From contig NW_027271522.1 of the NCBI RefSeq assembly GCF_040938485.1, positions 744,001 through 808,000 on the forward strand: a stretch of DNA of 64,000 nucleotides, read 5' to 3'. This document shows positions 4,301 to 27,480 of the stretch, piece by piece. This DNA comes from Diadema antillarum (Eukaryota). The position numbers were made by a program, and so were the translations under genes. The stretch's first letter is position 1, and every line of letters begins with the position of its first letter. The notes below the pieces were generated by a model. It did not search any database, had not been told where the DNA came from, and saw nothing but the letters and a program-made list of their open reading frames with translations.

Positions 4301-7300
4301 AGATTTCTAGGTCTGGAGTCTAACCTTAAACTAAGGTTGTAAGCTAGCACTGTAACAGTTAACAGTAGATCTAGAAACTTTATTCTAACACAGTTAGACA
4401 CTTAGATTCCAGAGTAGGCCTAACGTGTTGGTCGTTACATCTAACAATAATATGTTGTTAGGCCCTAGTTAGCTCGTAAGTAAGGTCTCAACTCTAAATT
4501 TAGTTCTAGTAGTATTTACTAGTAGTAGTAGTAGAACTCTACTACTAGTACTACTAGTAGAAAAAGTAGTAGATCTATCCTGGATCTAATCTAACTGAGA
4601 ACTCTAATGTTAGACCTTATCTAAGATTAGATTCTACTCTTGTTCTGGTCTCTAGAAAAATTTAAAACATCTACGGGTAGATGTTGCTGTTAGAAGACTA
4701 TCTAGACATAGAGAGGTGTAACTCTAATGTTAACATTAACTGTAACAACTGTTATAAGTGGCCCTGTTAATAAAACCTAGGGTCTAACACTAATCACAGT
4801 ACACGTTACATGTTAGGTGTGCAATTTACATGTACCTAACTGCGACCAGCCCGAACGAGAAGCGTTAATATTACTGCATACTGTGTACAAGGTGGGTTTC
4901 TGTCTACCCGATAGTTACGTCAGAATATAGAGCCTGTAACTATGGTTGACAGGATCTAACGTCAGATTTCTAGGCTACTAAGCAGCTAGTTCATATTAGA
5001 TTTGAACTTGATGTACCTATAAGTAAATGTGTGGTCAGACCCTCGGACAATCTAACGGTTACAGCTTTTGAGAAAATGGGATTGAGAATCTGAGGTTTCA
5101 CATCTAATGAAGCTATGAAAAGTAGTACTAACGTGCTACTAGTAACATTGTTAATTGCGATGAAGCCCACTGTTAACAGTGAAATGACTGGTGGAGTAGG
5201 CTAGACAAATTTAACATTTAACTGATGTAACAACATTACTAACAATGTTTTTATGGGTCTAAGACTATCTACACACAAACACACACAAAAAAAGCAAAAA
5301 CAATAAAAAAAAAACCAAATCTGATTGAACTGCTAATAACATTTGCCGGAACATTTATCACAATGATTTAACTGAAGTCAATGAGACAATTTGTTTGCAC
5401 CTGATTCTAAATTAGAGTTTTCGCTGAATTTCGATATTTATTAGTTTTTGTTTTTGTGTTTTTTTGTAAACGATATTTTATGTCGATAATATTACTAACC
5501 GACTCTAAATGTAGCCATGACAACTGTAACAGTTATTTAATTCTACTAAATCTTTTTCTACATTATAAAACTTGATAGGACTCCTGACTGCCAGCTGGAT
5601 GACCCTAGTTTGATCTCCATCCAGTGCTCCATCCTATAGGCCATGATGTTTGTACACTACAACATCCCTCTTGACCTACATGTATAAATGCGCAGACAAT
5701 GTAAATGTAATGATAATGGCAGGACCTTGTACTACAACATGGAGGGTACCCTGGATGTAGAAGACAATTATTAGTATTATACAACGTAATCCTTGCACAT
5801 ACTAAACAAACTAGGAGAATAACTGAAACTTGTGCTGAATGCAGGTTGTGTAACGTCTCAGCATGGTGATGATTTCCTCTCACTTCCCGTATTTCAGCTA
5901 GGACTTCAATTTACCTTTTAGCGTCCATACTGAATGTGACACTTGTTCACAGTAAATAGTAGTTTCCCAATAAGGCTTTTGCAGAAGATTGCATACAGAA
6001 CTACACCTTAGCATAACTGCACCCTGAACTCCAACAGTTATTGTTGTTAGTGGTTATACAGCACAAAGTGGTTAGCCCTACCAATATAGGAGATACAGTT
6101 TGTATAGATGATGAAGAAAAAAAGAAATACCTAGAGTACTATGTGTTGTTTATATAGGCTCTACTAAATATTATAACGAACTTTCAGTAAATCTTGAAAT
6201 CCAAGTACAAAGATTCATCCTTTCCTGAGGGAAATTACATAGTCTAGACTATGACCTACAAATTATACTCTACACAATTTTAAAGTTATGTCTATTTCCT
6301 AACGATGTTCTGTGAAGTAAGTATCATTTAAAATGGGGTATTCTTGTTTTGGATGAAAATAATATTCTTGAATTTAGAATTTGTATATGTCTGGTTTGTG
6401 ATATTAAACTGCTAAAAAGACAATTTTCCTTTAGGCCTATGAATTTTCAATTGCAAACTAAGGAGTTCAAATGAAAACTTCATTCGTCATCTTGTGTACA
6501 TTACCTTTCTGCATATAATTTTGCTGGACCCCAAATTTTCTGATTTTCTCAAATCAGCCTCTTTTGATCCTATTTTTTCTATATTCATCAGATTCTGTCT
6601 AAATGCCATACAAAACCTGTTGCTGCGGATGTGCAAGATCGAAGCTCTAAGGTATGTATCTACTAGATCTGTCGTACTGACCTAGATTAGTGAAACCATT
6701 TAGAAGTCACATAACTTTCTATTTTGGGTATAGTTTTGCATGGATGCAAGCTAATGCGTGAAAATGATATTCTTGAATTTGCAATTGATATACAAGTACG
6801 TCTGGTACTTGCTAACATGCCAATACTCATTAGTGCTTATTCTTGACCACAACCTTGCACCTCATTACTGTGTATCAAACATGTTGTAATTGAGAAACAG
6901 AGATTACGTGGTTACTGCGTGCACACATATGGTTCTGCTGAGACCTTGGCAGTTTTTCTCTCTAAAAAATCATGAAAGTGGCAAGTCAGGCATTATTTAG
7001 TGAAAATATGCTAAAATGTCTTTTTATATTCCTATTTTCTTAATATTGTACTACAAATGTGACATCACAAACTATAGAAGCCTTCATTGTCATCTGGCAA
7101 TGACTGAGCAGAAACTTAAAAAGAAAACCAAAATTTTTCACGTAGGACGGTGATTTATTCATGATGCTGAAAACAAAATGAAAAGCTGAAATTAGAAAAA
7201 AATAATAATCCAAATGGAAATTATGGAAAACCATTATACACAAGAAAGCACATAATATATGGTCAAATACTCTGGAGTCTCTGCATGACTATGTCTTTCC

Positions 7301-10300
7301 CCATCATGGGCCGATTCCATCTATGATGAAGAAACAAAAAAAACAAAACAAACAAAACAGAAAAAAGCCACGAAACCACTTGCTAGCTGGCAGGCAGACG
7401 TCTCTTTCAAAATTTGTTGGTGTAAACAAATGAAAAACAATGATAGTACTTTGGTGTAGATCTAGACAGATACATGTACTTGACAATCAACCACGGCAGC
7501 AAGGCCTGACTTGGGGGGGGGGGGGGGAGGGGGGGGGGGGTGATGATTAGACACCAGTTCATCCTGTAGCTGGAGCCAGTACAATCGTGACAATCTCAAA
7601 GCTAAGGTTTCTTGTACACGGTCTAGTCAATGCTCAGCAAAACTGCGTGTTTACTTCTCAAAATTCGACACTAAAATATGGGCCGTATGCAATGATAAAC
7701 ATGAGTTTCTTTGGTGATTTGTTTTATTTCCATTCATTTTTCCAATGTCATACAAAATAGTTAGATCGATCTAAAAGGAATGTGTTTTTTTTCTATAGAT
7801 CTACATATGAAGAGTTTGTTTGCAGTAACAGATACATCCATAGTTGCCAAATGGAGATATTTGTAATTAAATGTGAGAAAAAATAGAATCATATAAGAAA
7901 ATTTTTGCTTCTTGCGACCTAACTTTAAAAATGTACCTTCATATTTCATGACCAATACAGGGCAAAGTCCATGAAGATGTCCCATCAGATGCTAAAATTC
8001 ATTTTGATTTAATTAAAAGAATATTGTTATCATGTTGTAATTAACGAGTTAATTTTCATATTTTCAACATAGAAAATATTGAATTATGCAAATTTATGAA
8101 CGAAACACTGCCTTAATTTGCATAAATCAAAAACAGTTCTTCGTTTGGAACAAATGAAAAATTATCATCTAAAATGAGCTGAATTGATCTTCACGTAGTT
8201 CCTTTATTGACGAGACCCCTGTATGACTACTTATAAAATAGTATAATATCTATTGGTAAGACAAGATCATCAGCTTCATTATGCAAATTACAGGTGCACT
8301 CCCGATATAACGAACACGGTTATAACGAAATTTTGTTATAACGAAGTAAATCTTCTGGTCCCAAAATTATCACCGTTAAAGTCTATGGTAAGAAATTCGC
8401 TTATATAACGAACACGGTTATAGCGAAATTTCCATTATAAAGAAGTCTTTTCCGAGCGCACAGACAAAGAAAAACAAAAGAAATGTGCTCCGTTATAACG
8501 AAATGCGAATTGCTTTCGAAATTTCGTAGCGGAACAAGCATTTATAGCGTCCTCTGCATGGGTGAACGCTTCACGCCACTGTGTGTTCGCTCTTTGTGTC
8601 ACGCACAGTTTATTATTACGTTTATTATTGTGATACAGCTATTCCATCACATTTCACATAGCTTTCCAGTGTATGATGAGTAATCAGCAAACAGAATATG
8701 ATACAAATGCATGGTTTTCTTGTTTTCGTTATATTGTATTTGTTCGGTTATAACGAAATTTCGTTATAACGAAAGAAAATTGCCTGGTCCCGAGCATTTC
8801 GTTATAACGGGAGTGCACTGTATATGAATTACCCGGAGCGAAGCGTCCAATGCATATGGATTGTGTGTATGTTCTTCAAAAGTTTATTTATGAAGATTTC
8901 TAGCATTGACAAATCTTAATGCATGAAAGAAACCAAACTAAGAAAATAATTGCAAATTGGTGATTCTTTTATTTGTCTTGATTGAAGATTAATTTTCAGG
9001 TACCTTGTTCGGGGAAAGTACCCACTGCAAGTCTATCATTTTCTACATGTTGTAGTACAATCTGTGGAACTGAACATGACACTGTAGAGACATTTAAAAT
9101 CATTCCATAAATACTCTTCTGCATTAAAGACAAATTAGCCTGCATTATCATTTATTTCACATCTGGTTTATCCCCTATTCATCAGATTCTGAGTGCATGT
9201 CATGACAACCCAGATGCTGGGGATGTGCAAGATCGAAGCTCCAAGGTAAGTATCACTATAGATCTGTTGTATTATCTTGGAGCCATGTCATTTACAATTT
9301 CTCATAACTTAATTACCTCCGCCAAGGAAGGAGGTTATGTATTCGTTAACCGTTGGTTTGTGTGTTCGTTTGTTACTTAGTTTGTCCGTGTGCAAAATAC
9401 TCAAAAAGTAGTGAACGGATTGGGATGAAACTTGCAGGAAGAGTTGAGAATGACACAAGTAACAAACGATTAACTCTCGGTTAATGATCCGAGAACTTTG
9501 GGGGAATTTATGAAGGATTTTTGATGTTTTGGCAGTTAGGGGTCAATGAAACTTCGGAGTTCGCCAGGCTGCGCATATTGAGGTTTGCCTGCGCGCACTA
9601 AAGTGCATGCTCTAGTTTATGCTGGGGCGAGGTGCGCCATGCAGCTGAAGGCTTATGACGTAACAAAGGCTTCTATATTTGGAAATCTGGCTACTATTAG
9701 CACCGATGTGGTGTGTACCTATGACATCTCTATGAAGAACAAGATCAGTGAAGTGGTGGAAATAAGCTTCATGCTTGGCGGAGATCTGCGCTCTCAGAGT
9801 GCTTTTCTAGATGCTATCTGCATAATTCCTGCTTTTGTGGGAATGAAAGCTAATGTATGAAAATAATATTTATGAATTTCAATGTTGTATGTGTGGGGTT
9901 TGAAATATCAAGCCTATATTGCTAACATGCCAATCCTTGTTAGTTTGTGTCTCATATGTGTTTTGACCACAACCATGTACTTCATTACTGTTTACTGTAT
10001 GGTGGTGTATTTGAGAAAAAGAGAGTGTGATAAATGCATGCCCGCATACATGTGATTCTGCAGAGACATTGACAGTTTAGCCGTGTACAAAGCTTCTGAA
10101 AGAACAATGAAGTTATCCAGTAATTCTTGTTTTAATGCAAGAACATTGAAAATAGTCAATTTTTAAATATTTTCCTTAGTATCGTTTCATGCATGTGACA
10201 TCACAAGCTGTAGTAGTCTTGATATCCGGTATCAGTCTGAGTAGATACTTCCAAAATTTTAACTATTGCTCATGTCCTATTTTCCTCCATCTTTCAGTGA

Positions 10301-13300
10301 TGTGTTTATACTAATATTGCTGCTTGTATGTATTTATATGAATTAAGGCCGCCTTGTCATTTAACGTCTTGGAATGAATGATAATAATTTCCCAAACAAA
10401 CCAATCCAAGAAATATGGTACAGATTAAAATTCACTTGTTCAACAATAATCACATTACATACAATGCTACGTATAATGTGAACCTCATGTTGAAAGTGCT
10501 ACACACAGTTTGAAGAAAAAAATCAATTGAATTATATGATTGAATTCCATTCATGGTTAAACTTGATTTCAACACATGGTGATTCTTTTACAGTAGGCTA
10601 CAGTGCGCTGTACATCGTCTAGGATTGTATGTGATCTACGTGGTACTCTAGTTGACATTCAGTGCAGATCATAAGATCGGTGGATTTGAATTTACAATAT
10701 ATCATTCAGAAAAAATGCTGATCTTGCCTATGGCTGTCTGTCAATCACTTGATCACAAACCTACATAGGATATAATATTAACAGTCATGTATTCTTTCCT
10801 TATTCCTGTGCCCCAGAAATAGGCAAAGGAAACCAATTAGAAACTTTGAATTTTAAGGATTTAACATTTAATTTTGTACTTCATGCTTACAACTTTTTGA
10901 TATATTTTTCAATGTAAGGATATTAAATATGTCAAAATACATCGTTTATCGTTGAAAAAACAAGGATAAATGTGGAATAAAGTTTTTGAAAATTACACCT
11001 TTTTCATGAATTTTATTCTTATGAATCACCTGCCATCTGTCAAAACATGTAAAAAATTAAATGGCACTTGCAGATTTTTCATTTCACAAAATATGTTTTG
11101 GTATGTACCTGTCTGGGTTTGGACTGAGATTAATTCCAAACTTTATTTGTCCTCGCTGGTGTACATTATCATACTTCATACATTCTTGTAGGACCCAAAA
11201 CTTCCAGATTTTTTCTCACATCCACCTCTTCTGCTCTTATTTTTCTCTATTCAGCATATTCTTTCTGCATGCCATGCAAACCCTGATGCTCAGGATGTGC
11301 AAGATCGAAGCTATAAGGTATGTATTTACCAACTAGCTCTGTCGCCGGCTTAGTTAAGTGTAACCATTTTAAATTTCACAAAATTTTCATCTTTAGGTCT
11401 GGTTTTGCATGGATTCAAGCTAATGTTGGATATGATATTATTGAATTTCATTTGGTAATGGTTTATGTCGTGTTTAGAATATCAATTTGGTAATGATGCC
11501 AATGTTATTTAGTGCCTATACATGTTACGTATATTGCACACAACCAGACACTTCATATACATTATGGTATATCGTTAATGTTTTAAGAAACAGATAGAAA
11601 GTTACTGCCTACATACATGTGGTTATGCAGAGACATTGGCATTTGTTTTTTCCTCTACAAAGCGTGTCATGACAGAGTTGGGGTTATGACAGTATTGATT
11701 ATGTACTGCCTTTTATCAAAAAAACATCTAGTAGCATTCCTTTGTCACAGCCAAAAAGTTTGGGACGAACATCTTCGGACATCTTGACTTTTGAGCGAGT
11801 GCTACATGTAGCTGGCTGGTATTGACCCACAAAGGTACGTGAATAATGCTGTTAGTTTTCGACCCATTTTGTAAAACAAGTGATGCACAGGATTATTTCG
11901 TGGCGTTAGTGAAGGTGCGGCTCACTCTCATGTCGCACCATTGTCAATACTCTCGAGCGCGCCGCACCTTCACTAACACACTCTATCCTGTGCATCATTT
12001 GTATAAAAATCATTATAGACCGTCTATAGGCTTATCCGCACTGTGGCGGCAGCGCAGCGCCTGCAATACGCAACAGTGCGAGAGATCGGAAATTGAAAAA
12101 CGTAGTAGCCGTGGCACCGCCAGAGTTGCCCGTCGCATGTATCCAAGCGCTCGTATGGCCGCTGCAAACCTGAACACTAGCATACACGGGACAGGACGCG
12201 GACGGGTACGCTTGATTGTAAAGAAGGGTGATTGTGACATCATTTTGCAAATAGTATACTATTTGCAAAATGTCGTCATAAAAGTGACGTCATTTTGCAA
12301 ATAGTACTTCATGGAGTGTCAAACACACCAACACTCTAAAATAGTTCAAAATACCTCTAATCACGTGAAGCTCTTTTAACCAATCAATGAAAGACAAATT
12401 TTTGATCCAAAATATAATAGAAAATATTTTCTTCATTTACATAACATGCAGAAAAGGTGCTGTACAGCAGGAGCCGTAGCGGATGTAGGTATTCAAACAG
12501 ATGTATCTTCCATCGTGGGCACAGCTGAATCCAGTTCACAAACAACAACTACTGTCTTCGAATATGGGACACAGATGCCAGTTGCGGAACTGTCACCAGG
12601 AGCATTGGTCATTCAGGATCATCAATACAGCAATCCAAGCAAGGAGTGCACACAGTCACAAAGCCTTCAATCGTGCAGCCAACCCAAATCTCTACAGTGT
12701 TCCAATGATGAAGTCCAGACTTCAGTGCTTGTTACCCCGGTAGATACTCCGCTGCTGACACATTTGCCTGCACCACCGCTTAGTAATCAAGATGACTCCG
12801 TTAACCAACTGGTAGGATTTTATAAAGTTGACTATTGATATATATATTTACTGAAATGATATTGTAGTCAAGGAATCGCAAACAGCAATACCAAAAGTAT
12901 TTTCCATAAATATTTTTAGTTTTGGGTAATTTGAAAGTCTCACAAATAATACAAACAGTCATCATCCATGGTCTGTTGTGTGTATAATCCTTGCAGCATT
13001 TCAATTTTTTTTTTCATCTGTCACTCCATAAATTTTTGTCTTGTGTGTGTCTTCATACCAATGCAAGTCAATTTGTAACTTTCAATTTATCATATGAGTA
13101 AAAAAATTAAATCGCTAACTGAAAATCCTAATTTGTTCACATTAGCAGATCCATTGTGGGTTGTGAGGAGAGTTCAAAATGGCAGTTGGTGAACCATCTA
13201 TTTTTTTTTCCCCAAGTGCCTTATTGAAAGCACATGGTCAATTTTGACACCATAACACTTGCATTATCACAAGATTGACAGTACTTTAAAATTACAATGA

Positions 13301-15315
13301 CCCCAGAATGTATTTTTGGAACTGTAAAAAGTCTTGATATAAGGTTACCAAATGCATTTTCAGTGTTCATTACATTAGATTCAGAAGTTGAACCAAGATT
13401 GGGGGGGGGGGGGGTGATTTACATTATTTCCTTTTTTTTGGTACTCTTAAGTCAATTTGTAAGTATAGTGAAGATTGCAATCTTTAAGGAGATTGGAATC
13501 TTAAAAAAAAAATGCAATTTATTCAGGTAGTACTACGTAGTCTAGAAAAATGTGTGAAGATGAACCTGTGATCTTCAGGTGAGCAAGAGAACTCGAATTT
13601 TTTTTTTTTTTTTTGGGGGGGGGGGTTAACTTTGTTAGATGCTGTTTCTTTGTTCTAGTGCAAATCTTTGTTTTTATACTGCTAATTCTCTCCATCTTAA
13701 TCATTGTTTTTCTTCTTATTATTTTCTTAATCATTGTCTACAGGATCCTCCAAGTGCAGATTCAGAGGCAGACCTTCACGAAGATCCCCCATATGAGCCG
13801 GGCACTGATTCTGTATCACCTGACAGTGAAGAAACAACAGGAGAAGAACAATATGTTTCTTCCAAGAAATATCTGGTGTTTGAGGAAAATCTGTTGTCAT
13901 TGGTGTTTAAGTTATCATGCCCTACTTGCAAGGGAGCTGTGGGAGAAGTCAAACAGATTCCGCAAGGATCAATGCTGAGAGTCCAGGCATTCTGCACAAA
14001 TGGACACTATGTTGTGAGTTGGGATTCACAGCCACAAATACAAAGAACTGCTGTGGGTAATCTTCTCTTAGCTGCAGCCACATTGTTCACTGGGCTGACG
14101 CACAAAAGAGTGGAAGACTTCATGAGTTGTGCAGGCATTGAATACATCAGTGAGTCAAGCTTCTACAAGTATCAACGAACTTTGCTCTTGCCTGTAATTA
14201 ATGCAGAATATGAAGCTTCAATAAAGGCTGCTGTAGAGAATAGCCAGAAAGGTGTCGGTGATGGATCTAAACTTGTTGTTTGTGGAGATGGCAGGTGTGA
14301 CTCACCAGGTCACAACGCTAAATTCTGTACGTATTCGATGATGAACTCGTCAACTCATCAGATTATAGCCACATCTCTGGTGCAAGTTACACAAGCATCT
14401 AGTTCCAATGCTATGGAAAAGGAGGGGTTCTTGAGGTGCATGAAAGAACTTGCCAGTAAAAGCGTCAATGTTAACATCATGACTACAGATAGACACATGG
14501 GCATACGCGCTGTTATCAGGAAGGACTTTCCAGATGTAACACATCAGTTTGATGTATGGCACTTGTCTAAGAGTGTTAGGAAGAAGCTCTTTGAAAAGAG
14601 CAGACACAGAGGATGTGAAGCACTGAGTGGTTGGATACAAGCAATATCAAATCATTTGTGGTGGTGTGCATGCAATTGTCAACAAAACCCTGACAGACTA
14701 GTGGAAATGTGGACATCGATTACACACCACGTCACAGATTCCCATGAGTGGTGCCATGGTGATCACTTCAGGAAATGTGCCCACGAACAACTTACCCCAG
14801 AAGAGAGAGCTTCAGTGGAGTGGCTCGAGTCAGGATCTCCTGCTCATGAAGCTCTAAATGACGTGATTTTCAATCGCACCATTTTGAAGGACATCCGCCA
14901 AATCACCATGGCATTGAACACGGGGGGGCTAGAGCAATACCATGGCCTTATGCTCAGATATTGCCCCAAACGCCAGGCATTTGACTACCCTTGCATGCTG
15001 GGTAGAACACAAATGGCAGTCATCGACCATAATTACAACAGTGACAGGAAACATCTGAGGGACAGTGAGGGGAGAAAGAAGTACTCAGCAGTGTACCAAA
15101 AAGCGACAAAAAGATGGGTACTGAGGGCAAGGTATGCCAAGAAGGACTTTTCCTATCTAAGAGGAATGATGACAAATGTCTTTGGTCTGAAATTTGGCAA
15201 CATTGAGCTGGGTGATCCAGAAATCCCCAATCTTCCACACAACATAGCACCAGTTCCCTGCCCACCAATGGAGGAAATGATTGCAACACGTAGGACTCGC
15301 TTTCAAGAACTGTAA
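1355..15315 (+). CDS. THAP domain + Kolobok-type DDE transposase, about 825 aa, spliced
   Basis: Predicted exons 1355-1717, 6592-6651, 9186-9245, 11255-11317, 12452-12811, 13744-15315; all GT-AG, all phase 0. Exon 1 is a THAP C2CH domain (C-x4-C..W..CEDHF..AVPTIF). The last exon has CPTC..CTNGH, GDGRCDSPGH (D, 14287), TTDRH (D, 14488), FDVWH and TGGLEQYHG (E, 14932). No stops in the model. Inclusion of the mini-exons is inferred. Confidence 0.88.
1718..5300. repeat. Low-complexity intron region rich in short palindromes (CTAG, TCTAGA, AGATCT, GTTAAC, AACGTT, TAGGCCTA) and TAG runs
   Basis: Dense occurrence of these words throughout the first intron of the transposase gene; TAG/CTA runs near 4020 and 4510-4570. 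Confidence 0.7.
1961..2268. mobile_element. 308-bp MITE with 13-bp TIR and 6-bp target duplication (hAT-like)
   Basis: CAGAGACTCCAAC...GTTGGAGTCTCTG, with AGTTAG immediately on both sides (1955-1960, 2269-2274). Internal GGGAGA motifs repeat. Confidence 0.8.
8291..8820. mobile_element. Tc1/mariner-type MITE (TA target)
   Basis: TA|CAGGTGCACTCCCGATATAACGAA ... TTCGTTATAACGGGAGTGCACTG|TA, with many internal TATAACGAA motifs. Confidence 0.85.
9311..9811 (+). mobile_element. Non-autonomous Helentron-type element (HINE/DINE-like)
   Basis: 5' TACCTCCGCCAAG and 3' CTTGGCGGAG subterminal inverted repeat. A 3' hairpin GCGCTCTCAGAGTGC is followed by TTTTCTAG. Microsatellite-like GTTT stretch near the 5' end. 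Confidence 0.75.
12225..12425. repeat. Dispersed repeat, unclassified; inverted copy at about 56625-56825
   Basis: Shared GTGACATCATTTTGCAAATAGT..TACTATTTGCAAAA..CACGTGAAGCTCTTTTAACCAATC, present as the reverse complement near 56660-56820. Confidence 0.7.
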
Positions 15316-15369
15316 TTGTTAATTGAAGTGAAGTAAACATAAACTCTTGAGTTGCTTTAGTCGACATCA

Positions 15370-16260
15370 CCTGTTCATGAAGCATTGAATGCTGTTGTCT
15401 TTAACAAGACTCTGCTCAAGGATATTCGTCAGATCACTGTGTCATTGCACGCAAGAGGACTTGAGTATTATTATGGCCTCGTGCTCTCCCCTTTGCCCTC
15501 ATTTTATCATGACAGTTATACCCATGATGACACTACCCAAGAATGGAGAGGTCCAGTTGAATGGCTTGGGTTGAGATCCCCTGCTCATGAAGTTTTGAAT
15601 GCTGCAGTCCTTAACAAGACTCGCTGCTCAAGATCATTTGTCAGATCACTATGTCATTGCATAAAAGAGGACTGGAGTATTATGGCCTCATACTCAGATT
15701 TTTCCCTCATAACAACATGAAAGATAAACCCATGATGACGCTACCCAAGAATGGCGAGGTTCAATTCAGAATGGTACGAGTCAAGATCCCCTGGTCATGA
15801 AGCTTTGAATCGAGACCGCCTGCTCATGAAGCTTTGAATGCTGTTGTCTTTAACAAGACTCGCTGCTCAATAGTCGTCAGATTACTATGTCTTTGCACAC
15901 AAGAGAACTGGATCATCATCATGGCCTCATGCTGAGATTTTGCCCTGAACGGCAGGAAAGATATACCCATGAAGACTTTACCTAAGAATGGAGAGGTTAA
16001 GTTGAACGGCTTGGGTCGAGAACCCCTTCTCATGAAACTTTGAATGCTGTTGTCTTTACTTGCTGCTCAATGACATTCGTCAGATTAATATGTCATTGCA
16101 CACAAAAGGACTGGATTATTATCATGGCCTCTTGCTGAGATTTTGCCCTCAAAACAGCAGGAAAGATATACGTACCCATGAATACTTTGCCCAGAAATGG
16201 AGAGGTTAAGTTGAATGGCCTGAGTCGAGATTCCCTGCTCATGAAGCTTTTAATGCTGAT
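15370..16260 (+). repeat. Tandem array of about 208-bp units derived from transposase CDS 14790-14995
   Basis: Unit anchor CCTGYTCATGAAG at about 15370, 15580, 15790 (with a short extra duplication at 15820), 16026 and 16235. Units translate to degenerate VEWLG..SPAHEALNAVVFNKTLLKDIRQIT..GLEYY.G, matching VEWLESGSPAHEALNDVIFNRTILKDIRQITMALNTGGLEQYHG. Confidence 0.9.
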
Positions 16261-18792
16261 ATCTTCTGGAGGCACTGGACATAAGAGAGTACGTGACGCA
16301 ACTACAGGAAGGATAGAAGTGTTTGTCATCGTGATACTAACTTTATTTTGGTGACCTAGTTCTAATCAATGATGGGAATTAACATACCGCATAGTTCATG
16401 GTTGCTCGGGAAATAACAAACAGACTATAATGCCTGATGACAGACATTACATCAATATCGCTGAAAGGAAGACAATGAACAGCATTATCTTTTGTGAAAT
16501 CTTGGAAGGAGATGACTTCATGGAGCTCATATGGCATCAGTGAATTAATGGAGCAGTGAAATTTTATGAAAGCTGATACACAGCATTTTTTTAAAAGTGT
16601 CATATGTGTTGAAGCATTTGTGATTGTCAAGTGGAAATCAATGGTCGCAGGAGGGAGATATTGTGTGATGCTGTTACTTCAACTACAATTCCAGCATAAA
16701 GATAAATGCATCCTACAACAATACGTTGTGGTGGTGAGTTTGTGCTATAATGGCAGCATAAAGACAATCGCATGTGTGGAAGTATGAAATGAAGGTCAAA
16801 GTATGATATCGTGTTGCACAAGCATGACGTAAAGGTCAAGTTGTGATGTACTTTATGAAAATGTCGTTTGGAGCATAATTTGTGATATAATAGCAGTATA
16901 AAATGACATCAGTTGAGTCCTTGGATGAAAAACTCAGCATTCAGCCTTTCTCAGAGGTGATTTTATCATCAAAACGGTTATATTTGCTGTGATATCGCTG
17001 AAGGCTTGTGTGTTTAACCTCATCGCGGAGGAGATCATTTGCGACAAGTGAATATTTCCTAGTCACCGGAATTTATTTGTTGCATCTTTTCAGACCAGTA
17101 GAATTCAAAGCAAAGTGAAAGATTACTTGTGGAAGCGTTGAATAAATCACAAATACTGGGTTCTTAAGAATTCAGTAAGGTATCACATTTAAGGGGTCCA
17201 AGATGTAAGATAAGTATGTTGGGAAGTTGCGGACTTAGACTCCTCTTGTGATTCAACATGTAGAGGTTGTTTTGCATTTCTCTGCCAGCAGTCAATTGTC
17301 ATTGAAGAGGACTTGTTGTCATGAATCCAGCTGGATTCAATTCCACAGTTTTTGATAAGACTAATGTCATTGAAACTTATCACTTTGCAACCTGCTAGTT
17401 TGCATGTTGGTGGATAGTAAGTGTGAATTCATTGACAACAAACCGTATTCTTGTCATGTTGACATGGTCAAAAAATTGCAGTAGAGTTGAGCTTTTATAT
17501 CAGCATGCTACCAGCTGCAGTGGCTTTTGCTCACATTGTGACATATAATACACTAACATGACATTTTATTCCAGAGGGAGTTATTACGAATTGTATGTTT
17601 ATATTCTAGATGTGGCTTCAGCTTTGCATATTATTGCATATGTACCGGCCTAAATATCACCAGAGGCTTACATTTTCAGGTTTTCTGTCTGTCCTTATGC
17701 CTGTAAATGTGTTTTGGTCAGCGTTAGAAAGTTGATGGTGGAATCGAGGCAACTAAACTATGCTTATAGTTCTTGCTTGGCAATTTTACTTGGTAACTTT
17801 ACACCAGAACTATAATTTCGACGGGGACATGTGTGGTGACTTGTAGGTTATGTTGTGATGCCAGATCGATCACAAATAGTAATAGCTTTCAGTGAATTAG
17901 TGTAAGGAAATAGTGGAATTGTGCTGCCATCACTGAATTTTATCTTAATTCAATGTGAGATTGACACATATTGTCACTATAGACTTGAAAATATGTCAAT
18001 GCCAACAAACAAGGTGATTTGGTACATTTAACCAGACATGTTTTAAGCCATTACCCCAATTCAGATAACCCTATCCGTTATATCGTTGAATGCGGACAAA
18101 CATACATGTGATTTTTTCAGATTCTCATGAAAAACAAAAAGCAAAACGAGTAAAAAACCTATAAAATGTATCATTTGATCGGGTATATACTAACAAAGAT
18201 GCAAAATAAAAAATTTGTAATTTCGATCATCATTTGCAAATGCAAGGTGGTGAATAAGGAGAAAATTATTACTTTGTGAAGTGAAGCTTGCAACACATAC
18301 AGACTTTAAGGGTCCAAAATATAGGGAAGATAGGACATGTGCTTTCCAAGATTCATGATGAAACATGACTTTGGGAGTAATTTGCACAGCCAATATGATG
18401 TCTAGTGAAGTTGGCCTAATTATCTTACTATGAAGTAATATATGTGACATGGATTGAACTTGTGAAAATTATAAGAGATATAGTAAGGTCTTTATATATC
18501 AAGGTAATACAGACAAAGTTGTAGAAAGAAAAAAAAATATCCTGACGTCGAAGTTATGTTTCAATTTTAACCCAGTATGTTGATGTCATCCTGGCATCTA
18601 ATGAGAAAAATGGAGGGCACACCTCTGATAATGCAAAGTATCGGCTGCAACGAATTGAATCCTTGGAGAAATTCACATAATAATGTTGAGTGACCTAGTG
18701 TTCGACGGAGACTGTTGTGTCAATTTGCATTTAAAGAAACAAATGGATTGTCATAGAGATAATATGTACAAAGATTGAATCTTTAATGCTAT

Positions 18793-19260
18793 TTACAGTT
18801 CATTTTTACAAGGTATTAATGTCATCCAGTTTAAAATTTGAGGTTGCATACATACCAAAGGCAATTCAACAAGCTGTAGCACAATGAATTCTTGGTGAAA
18901 ATTTGTCCAGGATAAGTGTATATACAGTATAAAGGACAAGGTATTGACATGATACCTGCATATTTCCTTTAAAATGTTATGGATTGAATTCCAAATTTTT
19001 GAATCATTTGAAATCAAACTTGATGGAGAGCATGACAGTGAGGTATAGATGTGATAGATACTTATCTTGTGTTTGCCAGAAAAAACATTACCATGATCAA
19101 CCACAGTTTTACCAAAACCTTGTCGTAGGAAATTACTTCCACAGTATTAGTATTTAAACACTTTATTTCAAATTTGGTATGTACTGTTGTATGATACATG
19201 ATGTTTAATCTTAGATGTCGTTACGTTGAGACACTGTTTCCGCTTGTACCAAACAGGGCA
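18793..19260 (-). pseudogene. Possible decayed Mab-21 / cGAS-like receptor (cGLR) fragment
   Basis: Minus ORF 18793-19104 contains ILKEICRYHVNTLSF..W-x18-C..L..LIPCKNEL, resembling the Mab-21 C-terminal pattern SYH(V/L)KT..F..W-x18-C..L..YFIP..NL. An upstream frame gives PWP..VWYKR. No NTase GS/DxD motif was found. Match made by eye only. Confidence 0.35.
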
Positions 19261-20189
19261 TGGCCATGGTAACTGCATATACTTTCTTGAATATCTTAAT
19301 GAATGAATACCACAATTGTATTAAAATCTAGAGGTGTATTTGCGCAAAATGCCTTTTGTTTTTAGACCTGACAGACCTTGGTTCAATTCTTTTTCATAGG
19401 GGAATCACAGCTGCTGGACCTTTAGTGATAATTCTCGTTCACTTCAGGTAATTAAACACATATGTATTGATTTTAACTACAAAAAGCGGTACCTCCATGC
19501 ACCTTTCCCAGGGATGAAAGTATGAAATTACATGTATTTATTTGAGATCCTTTTTTTTTTCAATAAATGGCAAGGATATATGGTCAGAGCAGTGGTGAAA
19601 TGTATGACTCTGTATCCACAAATGATTCTCATCTCAATTGTGACATGCATTGCTTGCAGTTCCAGAGTGCAGTAACATCCATTATATATGGAGGTATCGA
19701 AAAAAAAAAATAAACCTCAAATTTGAAGCATTTGGAAATGAATGCCTGATTTCAGATGTTATTTTAATATACAGATTACCTGTTTTGTTTTTTTGTTGTT
19801 GCATAATTTGCACGTATCAATTAATGTTGTAACCCATATCATTGGCAAAACTCACCACTTCAGCATGCCCCCCCCCCCCCCAACCAATTTTTGCACTGAT
19901 AACACCCGATATGATTAGATGACTCTCATCTCACCGAGATGTATTAGATGACTCTCATCTACAAAGAGTCTCACATATCATATAATACATGAAAATTTCA
20001 CCCAAAATACACACACAGATGCAAAAACAATCTTATTAAATAACAATTGCATGAAGTGCTCTATGAGTGCTTGTGCATCTACAGTATGTGCAAGTACATT
20101 TTCGTGTACAGTGATGCAAAATGTATGTACTCGACATGCAACCGTAATGCATCAAAACATCAGAGTTTAGTTTAGATAAGTGCCACAGA

Positions 20190-20221
<32 letters not shown>

Positions 20222-20946
20222 TGTGTGTTAAGAGTTGGAATCATGCATAAAAATGTGCTGAAAATAAATCCTTGCTTCCAATCCCTCAACATGAAACTTG
20301 GCATTTACATCAAGAAACAAAGAGTGAAAATGTATAGGCACGAAACTATTGGAAAAGACTGTCTTCCAAAATTGTGTTACTACACACTATTTGAAGACAT
20401 TTTTTATTATGATATATCTGCAGAAGGGACATTTATTGAATGTAATGTTGTGACCGAACTTATGATAGTACATCAACACAGAACATATAGTTACCATTTA
20501 ACTTGATACAGACTCATTCCCATAGCATGCATTAGACTTGCCATGAATTGTACATTGTTAATGTGTACGTAAGCAACTGGTTACTAGTATGTACATGATA
20601 CGATAAATTAAGCTACAACCGTTACTATGCTAAACATGTAAAGTTACTGACAATAGGATATGTAGTGCAATGCAACCACGTCAAATTAAACTTCAATTAA
20701 CATGTAACCTGCTTTTTTTTTTTGTGGTGTCTTCAGCTCATTTCAACGGGAGTACCCTACACTTGCTCAAGTCAAGTTTTAGTGGTAATGCCAGTTAAAA
20801 TATGTCAACACAGTTAACATATTCTAGGAAGTTAAATCTATTTGAAATGAAGATGGTAACAGCTTAGCATAAGACGAAATTTGACTCGTGAAGTTTTAAA
20901 GTCAATACAAAGAGAAAAGGACTCGAAAATAAATTCCAATTATCAA

Positions 20947-21460
20947 ATGACTTAGCAAGCTAGACTATACTTTAGTGCAATCCGTGCCCTTTTCGCTATG
21001 TCATGCCAAACAAACGAGAAAGCATTTATTGTAGAATATTCGCAAGATTCCAGACTCACTAATGCAGGCATAGCACAATTTATATGCAGGCAGACTTTGG
21101 AAAATACTTTGGAAAAGTCTGTCAATAAATACTTGTAGGTTAGCATGTTGTCGATGATGCCACTGTGATTGGATGACATGTTTAAGTATACACAATGAGA
21201 GAAGCGCTTTCACTTTCTGATCCGATGACTTAGCAAGCTAGACTGTACGTTAGTGCAGTCTGTGCCCTCATCGCTATGTCATGCCAAACTGAAGAGAAGG
21301 CTTTTATTGCAGAAGATTTTTGCTAACATTACAGACTAACTGTTGCAAGTATATATAGCATAATTTATGATGTAGAATTTGGAAAAGACTACAGAAAATT
21401 CCGCCAAAAAATGGTTAAAATGTTTTGGATTTTGCCACTGTGATGTGATGACATTTTTAA
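20947..21460. repeat. Two-copy tandem duplication, period 278 bp
   Basis: ATGACTTAGCAAGCTAGACT..TAGTGCA..GTGCCCT..CGCTATGTCATGCCAAAC at 20947 and 21225. Confidence 0.85.
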
Positions 21461-21524
21461 TGAATGAATGAATTCTAAAAAGTAGTGAACACGAATGAAC
21501 AGATTGACATAAAAAAGAATAACA

Positions 21525-21712
21525 GTGGACTGTTGTTATAACAAATTTATCGGGCCTGCAGATTTCTTTCTTTGTATCAAAATTTGTTCACATCCTAACA
21601 AATAAGCAATAAAAAATACAAACCAGGCAAGGTTGTGGCCGGATATTTTAACTCATTGCAGCTGAAATTTTGTTATACAACAACAGTGTTCGATATAACG
21701 TGAGTGCACTCT
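21525..21712. mobile_element. Degenerate relative of the 8291-8820 Tc1-type MITE
   Basis: GTTGTTATAAC.. at the left end and TTCGATATAACGTGAGTGCACTC at the right end. Confidence 0.5.
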
Positions 21713-21855
21713 ATCACAACAGCAGTTCCAGAAGATATTAGTCTTGTATGTAGCATGAAAATAAATAGCAAGATTTAACTTCATAACAGTCTTTTTACAT
21801 CTCACTACAGTGTACTAGTATATGTTTAGTGAACACAGTAGGCCTCATTATCAAA

Positions 21856-22453
21856 CTATATATTTAATGCCTCATCGATCTCGGAAGATCCTTGAAAGCC
21901 AGTGTAGATGTTGTCCTCTGCGGGAAAGACTGCCCGTATTTTAGAAACCGCACAAGCCGGGATCACTCTTCGCTTTCCCTTTCCCAGGTATCCATGCGTC
22001 CATGCAGTGAAGGCCTGGTATGATGTAAATCTGTACCTCCTGTAATTAAAACAAGAACAAGAAGCAAACATGGAAAAACTTTGGTGAGCTACAGGTACTA
22101 TGTCACAATCATATTTGCGACATTAATATGAGACACAATCGAGTATATGACACCATTTACAATACACTGATATTAACTTTGCAAACATTCCTTTAAATAA
22201 AGTGTTGAGGAGACTATGACATTAATGTATATATGTATACAATATTAGTATATATATATATATATATATATATATGCATATATTAATGGAATACAAAGTT
22301 TTCTCCATTTCTGTCCTTTCAAAAATGCCTACTCTTCCTAGGCACAATGAATTTGATTGCAAACATGCATATGCAGTTCAATTCACTTATGTAAATACCG
22401 GTACTGTCCAAATGACAGTTTCGTTAGAAACATAAAAAGTGAAGATAACAAGA

Positions 22454-22494
<41 letters not shown>

Positions 22495-25400
22495 GGGAGT
22501 GGCTATGGTAGGGAGTTCCAATCCCCATTCAATCTTTTTTTGGGGTAATATTGCTTCAAAAAAAAAAAAAAAAAAAAAAAAAAAACAAGTTGAAAATTTT
22601 CTTGAATTAATGGTGGCAATGTTATCTTGGAGCATTTAGCGAAAGTGTAAGTTTTGCTGTCCGTACTGAATTCAAAATAATGTCTTGACATGTGAGTAAA
22701 TTACTACAAAATTGTTAGAATTTTTCCAATTTCTATTGAAAGCAATGGTGTCGATGTGTTGGAAACCCAACCATAGGCCCTCTAATTGGTGTGACCAGTG
22801 TCTTAAGATCTAATTTGCAATTTAGTATTCTTAATCAGGTTATTTAAGTACATCAGCTAGATGTCTACTCGAGAAGGTAGATCCACTACTAGTAATTACA
22901 TGTACTAGAAACTCTGTCAGATCTAACGTATTCACTTCAGGTATGGTTATAGGCTTTTAGCTAACGCTAGGAAGGAGGCCTTTGTGTTTACTAGCTTTTG
23001 CTGTTTACAATTTATATCACAGAATGAAGAACCTTGTAGGCCTAATGTTAATAGATCATACATTTATCTCAAATTCCACGATACCAAATTAATTGCATCA
23101 AATCACAAGACATGGGTAACTTCACAGTTGTAGTAGATCAACATTTGTCTTTAGAGTTGTAGTAGATCAACATTTGTCTTTACATGCATTATGCATGGAT
23201 ATATGTGTGTGTATGTTTGTGTGTGTGTGTGTGTGTATGTACATGCTGAAGGTTTTTAAACTATCACCGTATACATTACACAGTTGTAGTTATTCAACAT
23301 CTACTGTAGATGGCTGCTTTTGCGTGTGTAAACATTGCAAGTTAGACAAACACTGGAACTTCCTGTTTGCAAAGTCGTGTGACGTCTGGTTTGCATGCAA
23401 ATGAGGCAGTTACGAATAATTACTGTATGACAGCCAATCATTTCAGAGTTACTTAATGTATGCAGTATTTTACAACCAATCAAAATAGTTTTTGCCTTTG
23501 TGGCCATTGATGAGAACTAGCTAGCTTCCCGCGCGCGCTGGCTAGCTACTAGTAGCTTTCTCCACTACGATAACGTTTGTAGTATAGACCTACATACTAG
23601 TACAGAGGTAGACAGTCTAGTTTGCAACGCTATAAACGACATGCGCGGCCCCAAATTTAGTGAATCCTGCATGCATGCTAGCTGTAACAGCTCGTGTAAC
23701 TTTCATGCCATGGAGTGAACACCTTGCTTGATCTGTCTCAATTTAGCTCAGACCTGACGAGTGCTTGATTATCAGGCTCTTTACTCACACTTGGATTGTC
23801 AGTGATGTTTGACTCTTGAGATTCTATCTCTCAGTTTCTACTGATTACAGAGTAACGCTAGAGTCTACTGTAGGATCTACCCCGTCTACGAAGTGTATAG
23901 CCTATACTAGGCCTATCGACGAGTTTTGTGTACCTACTTGTGGAGACCACATGTTCTGCAGTTATCCACTGATCTTCATGTTGGATTATAATATATTGGA
24001 CTATATGCCCTACCGTCCACACCGAGTACCGTTACACTTCGTTGGACATTCCGAACCTCGGATAATTAGTAGGCCTAGCAGGCACTCCACTGACACACCA
24101 CTACCCCCGGTACCCCAAGGTTAGTATTTATTAGTAACCGTTAATACTAATACTAGTAGTACATTATGTTCGACTTCGAGGGATTTATATCGACCATCCA
24201 TGCCATCGGCATCGACCTAGAGCTCTAGAGTAGAGACAGAGTCAGTCTACTCTACTGTCTCTAGCCTACATCGTGCTCCTGTCTGAACATTGCTGTTATA
24301 GTGTTAAGAGCGTTAAGTACCACGGAAGGCTTGGCTATTGTGTTCTTTTTTTCGGCAATCTAACGTTTTGACATACAATCTATGTTCAACTGTTACTGTT
24401 AGGAGACCTAGGTCTAGAACCAGTCTAGTAGATCTAGAATCCAACGTTAGACTCTAGACTCCGACTAGAGTTAACAGTTACGAGTTAGATCTAGTGTTAG
24501 GGCTCTAGGCTAGCTTTAGGCCTAATATATTAGGACAACCTGCCATTTATGATTTTAAGGAACTCGGACTCGCGCCCGGGGGTTCCTTGACCTTGTTCCT
24601 GCTTGGATGACGCACAGCACAACATCAATTAGACTGGTCTAGAAATCTAGATCTATCAAACGACGAACGTTAGGCCCTAACACTAGGCCTAGCAATTTTT
24701 AGGACTAGGACCTAGTCAGTAGTAAAATACCATATTAGATTCTAGACTCTAATAGGTTTAACTGTTAGATGCTAATAGTTGAAAAAAAAAAGGAGTGTAG
24801 TGTAGGCCTACTTTACAGACAGTAACACTCGAACAGTGTTACAGTTCTGGTCGACGTGAGGATTATCATTTAGATTTCTAGCTTTTAATATTTTGCGTGA
24901 TATTCACTTCAGAAACCACTCTAACCAATTCTATGACGTAGTAGGATCTATAAGATGTCAAACTCAAAGAGCATGCAATCTAAAAGGGCTGTCAAAAGTT
25001 TATTTGATGAAATTCGGTTTTGAAGTGGCCGAGATATCCAAAATTGAAACGAGGTGAAACAAAGATTTCCCAATAAAGTTGGGGTAGAACTTCCTAACGC
25101 TAGATATTTCTACATATAACGTTAGAGTCTAGATCTAGTCTCTAGGTAATATTAGACCCTACCTAGTCTTTTATTAATATTATCATCTTTTTTTTTGGGA
25201 GGGGGGGCTATCTCTGCCATTTGAAAATCAGTTTTCATTAAAAAAAAACACACAGTTGAATCCTTCTTAAAATTATAAACCCAGGGCCAGGCTATTTTAT
25301 GGTTTTTCTTCATATTTTAAGTAAGCTAGTTTCTCATTTGATATCTCACTTTGGAATGTAAAAAAAAAAAAAAAAAAAAAATGAATCCCCACCTATTCAC

Positions 25401-26536: not shown

Positions 26537-27116
26537 TTGTATCTCGTCTAGTCGCCATAAAAAGTAAAATTTCTGGAGCTAGCCACACGTACACCTCGCG
26601 AGTTCGGTACATCACAGTGAACAGCTGTTCGCCTGTGTTGAGCCGCTCGATGCTGCCAGCGTTGATTCCTCTTACTGCATGCTCTACGAGAGCACGTACG
26701 GCTAACCATGCCAATTTAGTTTTACATATTTTCAGAAAATTGATTGTTTTCAGATCAAAGTAATTAATATTTGATATGATATGCTTCACATATCAATATG
26801 AATAGTTTCCGTAATTATTGTAAACTCATAAAATGCATATACGTATGACAATTTTATTTTGATACTGCATCATCAGTGCATGAATGTTTACTTCAGTAAA
26901 TTGACTTGTGTAGTATTTCTTGCGGAAAGCACAGTTGGCACCTGTGACGTATGCCAAATTGTGTGGATCGTTCCTGGGAATGCTCGTTTTCATTTTTTTC
27001 AAAAATCCATTACAGGCTTATCCTGGGTTTTAGAATCCTCTCTTTCCAGTTGTAGGCATCAAAAAAATGTAGATTAGAATTATCAGACAAGTAGAAAATG
27101 TCAGTACAGGTTTCTT

Positions 27117-27480
27117 TTAAAAGAAAACGAATTGTTTGAACTGTCTTTCGAATCACTTCTCAACCACCCAGATGACGCCGGCAGTATGTTGAAACTTATC
27201 GATGCCTCGAGATACTTTTTTTTTCAGTAAAATATGACACTGCATAATATGATGAAGGCCCTCTTATGTTTTTGCAAAATACAACTTGATTCTTCAACAA
27301 AATATCATCATCCAAAAATATTCCACAATTGGGAAGTATATTTTTCTAATATTTTAGATAAAGTAGGCAATAACGACTTCGAAAAACAAGAAGTTCTGAT
27401 TCTGTTTATAACACTGTTAATGGAACATAATATCTAACAATGTCACAATTTTATTCATAGAAATATCATAACCTACATTT
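27117..27480 (-). mobile_element. Decayed CR1/L2-like LINE RT fragment (N-terminal part, continuous with 421-849)
   Basis: Minus strand SLLPTLSKILEK at about 27341-27376 and WLRS at about 27155-27167. Confidence 0.75.

What the first reader, a model, noticed from the sequence alone, without database searches (positions are those of the whole stretch)
15370..16260. Transposase 3' region contains about 4 tandem, decayed copies of its own catalytic-Glu coding segment
About 55 bp after the stop codon begins an array of roughly 208-bp units (anchors near 15370, 15580, 15790/15820, 16026, 16235). They are homologous to CDS 14790-14995, which encodes the helix and the TGGLEQYHG motif with the third catalytic residue. 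The units are frameshifted and non-coding. A satellite born from an element's own active-site exon and kept in its putative 3' UTR could be a nascent satellite, a small-RNA decoy or self-silencing source when read antisense from the convergent KolX side, or a gene-conversion reservoir. These roles are hypotheses.
Basis: partly seen in the sequence, partly recalled or inferred. Interest (0 to 1): 0.7.

Follow-up and report, generated by a model that had tools for sequence, protein, structure and literature searches.

The report
Transposase-derived repeat array inside Kolobok transposon
Just after the stop codon of a recently active 26-kb Kolobok jumping gene lie about 4.4 decayed tandem copies of a 69-codon piece of a transposase gene; the array is real, old and present in every transposase-bearing copy found, but nothing indicates that it does anything.

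Summary
Window 15349-16266 holds 4.4 head-to-tail units of 208-237 bp. Each is 63-71% identical to CDS 14770-14976, which is 207 bp (69 codons) and encodes the C-H half of the H2CH zinc finger and the invariant catalytic Glu.

The array is not private to this copy. It belongs to a 26.3-kb TTAA-flanked Kol0-type Kolobok element (850-27120). It occurs in 9 loci of this 1.75-Gb genome, and contigs of a second organism label also hold it. One copy has 7.4 units, so unit number changes.

The units are 78-90% alike, whereas whole element copies are 99-99.8% alike, so the array long predates the recent burst. It was copied from an ancestral version of the segment, not from today's CDS. A dead sister family carries an array-type unit in frame inside its CDS with the same junction.

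None of the proposed functions finds support:
- The longest exact array/CDS match is 15 nt.
- No solo arrays occur elsewhere in the genome.
- No constraint is visible.
- 0 of 51 relatives in other animals has such an array.

RNA could not be tested. My best reading is a neutral hitch-hiking relic of an internal tandem duplication. This is a known kind of thing, and interest is low to moderate. The scan's earlier notes cover this same element.

The parts
850..27120 (+). Complete Kol0-type Kolobok element, including TTAA at both ends (850-853 and 27117-27120). The termini read AAG...CTT.
   Evidence: Five other genomic copies align at 99.0-99.8% exactly from 850 to 27120, with unrelated flanks.
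1355..1714 (+). THAP DNA-binding exon of the transposase, with an AVPTIF box.
   Evidence: Pfam THAP, E 3e-16. tblastn to the N-terminus of P0004.
13753..15315 (+). Main and last transposase exon, 520 codons plus the stop at 15313-15315.
   Evidence: ORF. Pfam PF20700, E 6e-12. 441 homologues, best 49% identity. This C-terminal part of the exon (window 14650-15312) is 100% identical in 8 loci.
14770..14976 (+). CDS segment homologous to the array unit: 69 codons, residues 340-408 of the exon. It holds C342 and H344 of the H2CH finger and the invariant E394.
   Evidence: Junction mapping from the alignment. Invariant columns.
15349..16266 (+). The array: 4.4 decayed direct units (U0p 15349-15520, U1 15521-15728, U2 15729-15965, U3 15966-16174, U4p 16175-16266).
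15775..15832 (+). 29-bp internal tandem duplication inside U2. It is absent from the second organism's contigs and from the extra units of the C1149 copy.
   Evidence: family D2, spacing 29. ('left out 29' at 15775)..
17141..17146 (+). First AATAAA or ATTAAA after the stop codon, and therefore a candidate poly(A) signal. If it is used, the array lies in a 3' UTR of about 1.8 kb.
   Evidence: Motif scan. This is inference only, since no RNA data exist.
26144..26536 (-). 5' exon of the convergent KolX gene (P2X7-ballast-like).
   Evidence: Pfam P2RX7_C, E 1e-5. KolX is described in PMC9587614.

Best explanation
The array is a neutral, hitch-hiking relic. An ancestral Kolobok transposase gene suffered an in-frame tandem duplication of a 207-bp (69-codon) segment. 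The breakpoints share a 3-nt CAG microhomology, which is typical of replication slippage or of template re-invasion during gap repair after excision. Copies of that unit multiplied, lost their reading frame, and in this lineage ended up just downstream of the stop codon, where they do not disturb the transposase. The array has since been copied passively with every transposition. It grows and shrinks by unequal exchange or slippage (7.4 units down to 4.4, plus a 29-bp internal duplication). Shown: homology, tandem structure, presence in all transposase-bearing copies found, variable unit number, an age far greater than the recent burst, and a junction shared with the in-CDS units of a sister family. 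Inferred: the slippage or gap-repair mechanism, the route by which the units reached the 3' side, and the absence of function.
For: (1) The array is 100% identical in 8 loci. A ninth locus (C1149) has a long form, and each insertion has its own flanks and TTAA. (2) Units are 78-90% identical to each other, while element copies are 99-99.8% identical, so the array predates the burst by a wide margin. (3) C1149 has three extra units that are 85-90% identical to the rest and flanked by two 98%-identical units. The common form is therefore a 3-unit deletion by unequal exchange. (4) All array junctions and the A|B junction inside the CDS of the dead sister copy C185 share the same breakpoints, and in C185 the junction stays in frame (ORF 1626-1928 of L011). 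(5) The tree is ((window CDS, C185_B) 100/100, (C185_A, array units) 100/100). Array-type units keep the family-consensus V, K and H where the CDS has I, R and N. (6) There is no sign of function. The longest exact match to the CDS is 15 nt. The shared 14-bp subterminal motif is absent from the array. No solo arrays occur in the genome. Against the second organism's contigs the array shows 3.5% substitutions plus many indels, compared with 2.0-2.4% in the flanks. The two closest intact paralogous families, on contigs C549 and C503, show no extra copies. None of 51 related loci from other animals with at least 600 bp of 3' flank has a direct CDS-derived repeat.
Against: The array has survived a long time in an active lineage, also occurs under a second organism label, and no full-length copy lacking it was found. 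That is what a useful part would also show. Expression, 3' ends and small RNAs could not be examined. U0 into U1 still keeps an open frame of 111 codons. In 5 related families of other animals the 3' flank carries short antisense copies of the family's own CDS. This hints that own-CDS sequence in this position may sometimes be used. How the units moved from an in-CDS position, as in the sister family, to behind the stop codon is unexplained.
Confidence: 0.65

Rival explanations
1. The array is a functional 3' UTR module. When transcribed with the transposase mRNA, or antisense from the KolX side, it yields small RNAs or binds factors that tune or silence the element.
For: The array lies between the stop codon and the first AATAAA. 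It is retained in all 9 transposase-bearing copies and in a second organism. Five related families elsewhere carry 23-47-nt antisense copies of their own CDS in the same position, and all 16 downstream hits are inverted, compared with 0 hits in shuffled flanks.
Against: The array is in sense orientation and shares at most 15 contiguous nt with the CDS, so it cannot guide or decoy CDS-directed small RNAs. No constraint is visible relative to the flanks. No RNA data exist.
Confidence: 0.1
2. The array is a recombination partner of the CDS. It acts either as a gene-conversion reservoir or, conversely, as a built-in hazard that creates defective copies with a duplicated catalytic segment.
For: The sister-family copy C185 has a mosaic unit in its CDS. 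Its 5' third is 88% identical to its own CDS unit. Its 3' two-thirds are 75-90% identical to the array units in all but two of the comparisons made (67% and 69% in the last segment), against 67-74% to its own CDS unit. This fits a past exchange between array-type and CDS-type sequence. C1558 appears to carry more than one extra unit in the CDS.
Against: Present identity of 63-71%, with exact matches of 15 nt at most, is far too low for efficient homologous exchange. The only products seen are dead pseudogenes. The same mosaic can arise from an original in-CDS duplication followed by local homogenisation.
Confidence: 0.1
3. The array is a nascent satellite, that is, a seed that can leave the element and expand into long arrays.
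For: It is tandem, its monomer is about 209 bp, its unit number varies (4.4 against 7.4), and it is dispersed by transposition. Coding-sequence-derived satellites from a CACTA transposase domain are documented (PMC7320549).
Against: A genome-wide DNA search finds the units only inside the element copies and in C185, and no array exceeds 7.4 units. Those counts are lower bounds by the tool's own caveat.
Confidence: 0.1
4. This rival concerns origin only. The units came from the CDS of a sister Kolobok family, through template switching between elements during repair, and not from this element's own ancestor.
For: The array consensus is 84% identical to the sister family's in-CDS unit C185_A but only 72% to the window CDS. 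Relative to the window gene, C185_A is as diverged as the rest of the C185 gene (71% against 71% for the N-terminal part), whereas C185_B is closer at 82%.
Against: Third-codon-position identities for N, B and C (53, 62-64 and 55%) overlap within sampling error. The long branch of the still-evolving window CDS (0.18 against 0.034) explains much of the asymmetry. Each comparison rests on only 207 bp.
Confidence: 0.25

Closest known systems
Satellite monomers generated from the tnp2 transposase domain of the CACTA-like element Jozin in Chenopodium (PMC7320549)
   Same: Tandem repeats whose founder monomer is a fragment of a DNA-transposon transposase coding region, physically attached to the parental element.
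   Different: In Jozin the monomer is about 40 bp and 82-95% identical to tnp2, and it has expanded into the major genomic satellite. Here the unit is 207 bp (69 codons) and 63-71% identical to the CDS, reaches only 4.4-7.4 units, and is confined to the element.
Xstir tandem repeats riding on the Xmix T2-MITE, a Kolobok-type non-autonomous element, in Xenopus (cited in PMC6004289)
   Same: An internal segment of a TTAA-targeting Kolobok-type element is amplified in tandem and carried along by transposition.
   Different: Xmix is a non-coding MITE, and its repeat became a large repeat family. Here the unit derives from the catalytic coding segment of an autonomous element and has not spread.
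Internal tandem repeats of the foldback transposon Tetris in Drosophila virilis (PMC4079207)
   Same: Tandem repeats internal to a DNA transposon, variable in number between copies.
   Different: The Tetris repeats lie in the terminal inverted repeats, are not coding-derived, and seeded a satellite.
Tandem repeats in the 3' untranslated region of plant Ogre/Tat LTR retrotransposons (from my own memory: Macas et al. 2009; not checked here)
   Same: A permissive region just behind the last ORF of an active element accumulates variable tandem arrays.
   Different: Those are retroelements, and their repeats are not derived from the element's own coding sequence.
Kol0 lineage of the Kolobok superfamily (PMC9587614)
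   Same: The host element shares the TTAA target, 5'-RR/YY-3' termini, a THAP-DDE transposase with a C/DxxH motif and a zinc finger before the last E, and a second gene, KolX, with a P2X7-ballast fold.
   Different: At 26.3 kb (about 31 kb in undeleted copies) it is far longer than the 7-14 kb full-length Xenopus Kolobok elements listed in PMC6004289. No CDS-derived array is described in either paper I read.

Membership tests
Kolobok superfamily, Kol0 lineage (host element) | TTAA target-site duplication | tested here: met
   TTAA lies at both ends of the window copy and of four of the five other copies aligned. C1931 has TTAG on the right. Flanks are unrelated between copies. Definition from PMC9587614 and PMC6004289.
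Kolobok superfamily, Kol0 lineage (host element) | Termini 5'-RR ... YY-3' | tested here: met
   The left end reads AAGGGC... and the right end reads ...TTTCTT. The inverted repeats are otherwise weak.
Kolobok superfamily, Kol0 lineage (host element) | DDE transposase with a C/DxxH signature and a zinc finger between it and the last E | tested here: met
   These residues are invariant in 16 aligned homologues: D179/D183, D246, D267-V-W-H270, H326, H331, C342, H344 and E394. Catalysis itself was not tested. No solved structure matched.
Kolobok superfamily, Kol0 lineage (host element) | THAP DNA-binding domain with an AVPTIF box | tested here: met
   Pfam THAP, E 3e-16, on 1355-1780. The ORF contains the literal string AVPTIF.
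Kolobok superfamily, Kol0 lineage (host element) | Second gene KolX with a P2X7 cytoplasmic-ballast fold | tested here: met
   Pfam P2RX7_C, E 1e-5, above the curated cut-off, on 26144-26536(-). Only this exon was examined.
Satellite DNA | Head-to-tail tandem monomers | tested here: met
   4.4 units in the window copy and 7.4 in C1149, in register.
Satellite DNA | Long arrays or high copy number independent of a parental element | tested here: not met
   The genome-wide search finds units only within the 9 element copies and in C185. The tool states that its counts are lower bounds.
Small-RNA (piRNA/siRNA) source or decoy acting on the transposase | Enough contiguous identity or complementarity to the target CDS | tested here: not met
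   The longest exact match is 15 nt in sense and 10 nt in antisense.
Small-RNA (piRNA/siRNA) source or decoy acting on the transposase | Small RNAs actually produced from the array | not testable with these tools
   No RNA run is on record for this sequence. The runs that were laid are contigs of unknown library type.

The most novel reading that the evidence does not exclude
Own-CDS-derived sequence behind the stop codon is a recurrent, selected feature of Kolobok transposase genes. In this reading the sense array here and the 23-47-nt antisense CDS patches found in five unrelated families of other animals are two states of one self-regulatory device. For example, 3' UTR-derived small RNAs or intramolecular duplexes could limit transposase output. 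The array would be an old, now degenerate version of that device, or a recombination trap that converts active copies into defective ones.
Probability: 0.08. Interest if true: 0.65.

Novelty: new member of a known kind. Interest (0 to 1): 0.3.

Why it matters
As it stands, this is a cleanly documented example of how a tandem repeat can be born from a transposase's own coding sequence and then ride along in an active DNA transposon. Three stages are preserved in one genome: in-CDS units in a dead sister family, a 7.4-unit array, and a 4.4-unit deletion form. That makes it a useful illustration of the link between transposons and satellites, and of template slippage in cut-and-paste elements. 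It does not change any concept. It would matter more if RNA data showed the array, or the antisense patches seen in relatives, to be a self-regulatory module.

Tried and rejected
- Tandem Repeats Finder reported nothing at the array, even at a score threshold of 30. The units are too diverged, so I used blastn, tblastn and MAFFT instead.
- No public RNA run holds the stretch. The one read-laying run used contigs of unknown library type, which cannot show transcription or 3' ends.
I used metagenome contigs instead.
C1558, C1397, C557, C1268, C549 and C503 are therefore known only from hit coordinates. I did not try another tool to obtain them.
- I tested whether the array carries the element's subterminal motif, as a possible transposase-binding sink. 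The shared 14-mer GTCACAGGTGCCAA and its sub-words are absent from the array, so I rejected this idea.
- I searched the first 30,000 bases of the window, which hold the whole element, for short inverted CDS copies like those seen in relatives, and found none.
- The PDB sequence search with the family profile found no relevant structure.
- I considered a chimeric origin, in which the sister family's CDS-type unit was imported from this family, on the basis of region-wise identities. The third-position differences lie within sampling error, so I keep this only as a rival.
- I considered an alternative coding exon or an extra protein from ORF 15385-15720. It has no Pfam hit, and I saw no evidence for it.

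Full report
**What is in the sequence**

The long ORF 13639-15315 (+) carries the last and main exon of a transposase. A splice acceptor lies at about 13752, and the stop codon is at 15313-15315. blastn of CDS 14750-15050 against the whole 64-kb window gives six direct hits. All lie in 15349-16266, at 66-73% identity and E 6e-24 to 5e-8, and there are none elsewhere. tblastn of the protein finds residues 335-415 repeated nine times in that interval, with best E 7e-14.

Cutting at the recurrent CCCATGA motif gives these units:

| Unit | Coordinates | Note |
|---|---|---|
| U0 | 15349-15520 | partial |
| U1 | 15521-15728 | full |
| U2 | 15729-15965 | contains a 29-bp internal duplication |
| U3 | 15966-16174 | full |
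| U4 | 16175-16266 | partial |

Units are 78-90% identical to one another and 63-71% identical to the CDS. TRF missed the array.

- Homology starts 34 bp after the stop codon.
- The homologous CDS segment is 14770-14976.

The second correction comes from the junction sequence. Every unit ends with the equivalent of ...CCN AAR YGN CAG and restarts with the equivalent of AAG AGA TGT GCC CAY. That corresponds to 207 bp, or 69 codons, with a CAG microhomology at the breakpoints.

**What the segment encodes**

In an alignment of 16 homologues (38-49% identity to the window protein), the following residues are invariant:

- D179/D183 (GDGRCDSPG)
- D246 (TDRH)
- D267-V-W-H270
- H326, H331, C342 and H344
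- T390, G391, E394 and H397

According to PMC9587614, Kolobok transposases have a C/DxxH signature after the second D, followed by a zinc finger and then the last catalytic E. The 69-codon unit (residues 340-408) therefore holds the C-H half of the H2CH finger and the catalytic Glu. It rests on conservation, however, not on an assay or a structure, and no solved relative exists.

**The array belongs to a large, recently active element**

A genome-wide search finds the 918-bp array at 100% identity in 8 loci on different contigs, including the window itself. A ninth locus (C1149) has a long form, and a 75%-identical relative lies at C185.

Alignment of 40-kb stretches from five other loci shows 99.0-99.8% identity exactly from window 850 to 27120. 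Outside those limits the flanks are unrelated, and TTAA sits at both ends. The termini read AAG...CTT.

Other features of the element:

- A THAP exon with a literal AVPTIF box lies at 1355-1714 (Pfam E 3e-16).
- A P2X7-ballast (KolX) exon lies on the minus strand at 26144-26536 (Pfam E 1e-5).
- These features match the Kol0 lineage of Kolobok as defined in PMC9587614 and PMC6004289.
- The window copy lacks about 5.1 kb that four other copies have at 11754/11760. That stretch has no transposase homology.
- One copy (C1996) lacks window 11761-18015, that is, both the transposase exon and the array.
- The stretch of the transposase exon that I searched (window 14650-15312) is 100% identical and lies in an open frame in 8 loci.

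The array is a fixed part of the family.

**The array is dynamic and much older than the burst**

The C1149 copy has 7.4 units. Its three extra units are not fresh duplicates. They are 85-90% identical to the others and sit between two 98%-identical units. The common 4.4-unit form is thus best read as a 3-unit deletion by unequal exchange.

Contigs of a second organism label (X2, X3) cover window 15010-17400 at about 96-98% identity. They join the end of the CDS to U0, lack the 29-bp duplication, and carry the ATTGA insertion typical of the C1149-type unit.

Substitution densities against those contigs are:

| Region | Substitutions | Rate | Gaps |
|---|---|---|---|
| CDS end and U0 | 13 in 540 | 2.4% | none |
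| Array | 28 in 795 | 3.5% | 40 gap letters |
| Downstream | 22 in 1086 | 2.0% | 26 gap letters |

No constraint on the array is visible. Pairing of non-orthologous units may inflate the array figure, however.

Runs of organism A reproduce parts of the array at 100% identity. No RNA run is on record, so expression was not testable.

**Where the units came from**

C185 (locus L011) is a decayed relative of the transposase gene. It has the arrangement N-terminal part, unit A, unit B, C-terminal part. Two 69-codon units lie in tandem inside the CDS, and the A|B junction (…CPKWQ|KRCAH…) is still in frame. That junction has the same breakpoints as the unit-to-unit junctions of the window array.

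A maximum-likelihood tree gives ((window CDS, C185_B) 100/100, (C185_A, all array units) 100/100). The array consensus is 84% identical to C185_A, 79% to C185_B and 72% to the window CDS.

At the protein level, array-type units and C185_A read VVFNK…LHT(R)GLE, which agrees with the family consensus VVFDK…CHTGxLE. Both CDS-type units read VI(F/V)NR…LNTGGLE. The units therefore descend from a version of the segment older than the split of the two families. They were not copied from today's CDS.

A second sister-family copy, C1558, appears from hit coordinates to hold more than one extra unit in its CDS, with about 233 and about 55 extra bp.

C185_A is a mosaic. Its 5' third is 88% identical to C185_B. 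Its remaining two-thirds are 75-90% identical to the array units in all but two of the comparisons made (67% and 69% in the last segment), against 67-74% to C185_B. At least one exchange between array-type and CDS-type sequence has therefore occurred.

Two questions stay open:

- Was the founding duplication inside the CDS, as the fossil copies suggest, or behind it?
- Did the units come from this lineage or from the sister family?

Region-wise identities give N 71%, A 71%, B 82% and C 74%. These hint at a chimeric history, but the third-position values overlap within error.

**Tests of the proposed functions**

- **Small-RNA decoy or self-silencing.** The longest exact array/CDS match is 15 nt in sense and 10 nt in antisense. 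That is too short for siRNA or piRNA cross-targeting as the sequences stand.
- **Nascent satellite.** No array-type units occur outside the element copies and C185, and no array exceeds 7.4 units (the tool states that its counts are lower bounds).
- **Conversion reservoir.** Present identity is too low. The only recombinant products seen are dead genes.
- **Transposase-binding sink.** The 14-bp subterminal motif shared by both ends is absent from the array.
- **Recurrence.** The two closest intact paralogous families in this genome (C549 at 53% and C503 at 49% amino-acid identity) show no extra copies nearby. None of 51 related loci from other animals with at least 600 bp of 3' flank has a direct CDS-derived repeat.
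- **Placement.** The only AATAAA or ATTAAA between the stop codon and 18200 is at 17141. Placement in a 3' UTR is therefore plausible but remains an inference.

**Conclusion**

The best-supported reading, with confidence about 0.65, is a neutral passenger. An ancient in-frame slippage duplication of the zinc-finger/Glu segment multiplied and decayed. It now sits in a permissive place behind the stop codon of an active Kol0 Kolobok element, and it expands and contracts by unequal exchange.

This is a new example of a known kind. The comparable cases are:

- transposase-domain-derived satellite monomers in the CACTA element Jozin (PMC7320549)
- the Xstir repeats on Kolobok-type MITEs (PMC6004289)
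- the Tetris internal repeats (PMC4079207)

**Side observation**

In five unrelated related families from other animals, the 40-800 bp behind the stop codon contain 23-47-nt pieces of the family's own CDS, 90-100% identical and always inverted. The families are L039/040/042, L085, L094/099, L102 and L105/106.

All 16 downstream hits are inverted. There were 0 direct downstream hits and 0 hits in three rounds of shuffled flanks. This pattern is not present in the window element. It is the reason I keep a small probability for a functional reading of own-CDS sequence in this position.

**Limits**

- Further genome letters could not be fetched.
- No RNA data exist.
It fits the best named hits, which are in Lytechinus, Holothuria and Ptychodera, but I did not test it.

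Noticed in passing
L039 2783-2811 and 3053-3085; L085 7568-7614 and 8317-8339; L094 5691-5741 and 6013-6043; L102 1844-1873; L105 3723-3755: In five unrelated Kolobok-type transposase families from metagenome contigs of other animals, the 3' flank holds 23-47-nt, 90-100% identical, always inverted copies of pieces of the family's own CDS. All 16 downstream hits are inverted, with none direct and none in shuffled flanks. Most pieces (27-33 nt) are about piRNA-sized. They could form duplexes with the CDS or yield antisense small RNAs.
   Followed up: partly
L011 1442-1859 (G000:C185) and G000:C1558:327971-329365: A dead sister family carries the 69-codon catalytic segment duplicated in tandem inside the CDS. 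The junction is in frame in C185. C1558 seems to hold further extra units and could not be read.
   Followed up: partly
L009 854-2417 (G000:C1149): One element copy has a 7.4-unit array. Its three extra units are 85-90% identical to the rest, so it is probably the older form from which the 4.4-unit array arose by deletion.
   Followed up: yes
window 11754-11760: The window copy of the element lacks about 5.1 kb that four other copies carry at this point (C590 has about 1.7 kb). The missing stretch has no homology to the transposase proteins I searched it with.
   Followed up: partly
G000:C1397:32903-42628, C557:906492-913974, C1268:507598-511288: Fragments homologous to the zinc-finger/Glu region of this transposase (42-49% amino-acid identity) recur every 1.3-2.3 kb in tandem clusters, and several have open frames of about 177 codons. 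They may be a tandemly repeated domesticated fragment or a different composite repeat. The sequence was not read.
   Followed up: no
window 850-27120: At least 9 copies of a 26-31-kb Kol0 Kolobok element are 99.0-99.8% identical, and the part of the transposase exon that I searched is identical and open in 8 of them. The element is unusually long and evidently recently active. Copy C1996 is an internal deletion that lacks 11761-18015.
   Followed up: partly
window 854-1250 and 26720-27116: The terminal inverted repeats are weak (AAG plus TGTAC only), but both subterminal regions share the 14-mer GTCACAGGTGCCAA in inverted orientation. It is a candidate THAP-binding site.
   Followed up: partly
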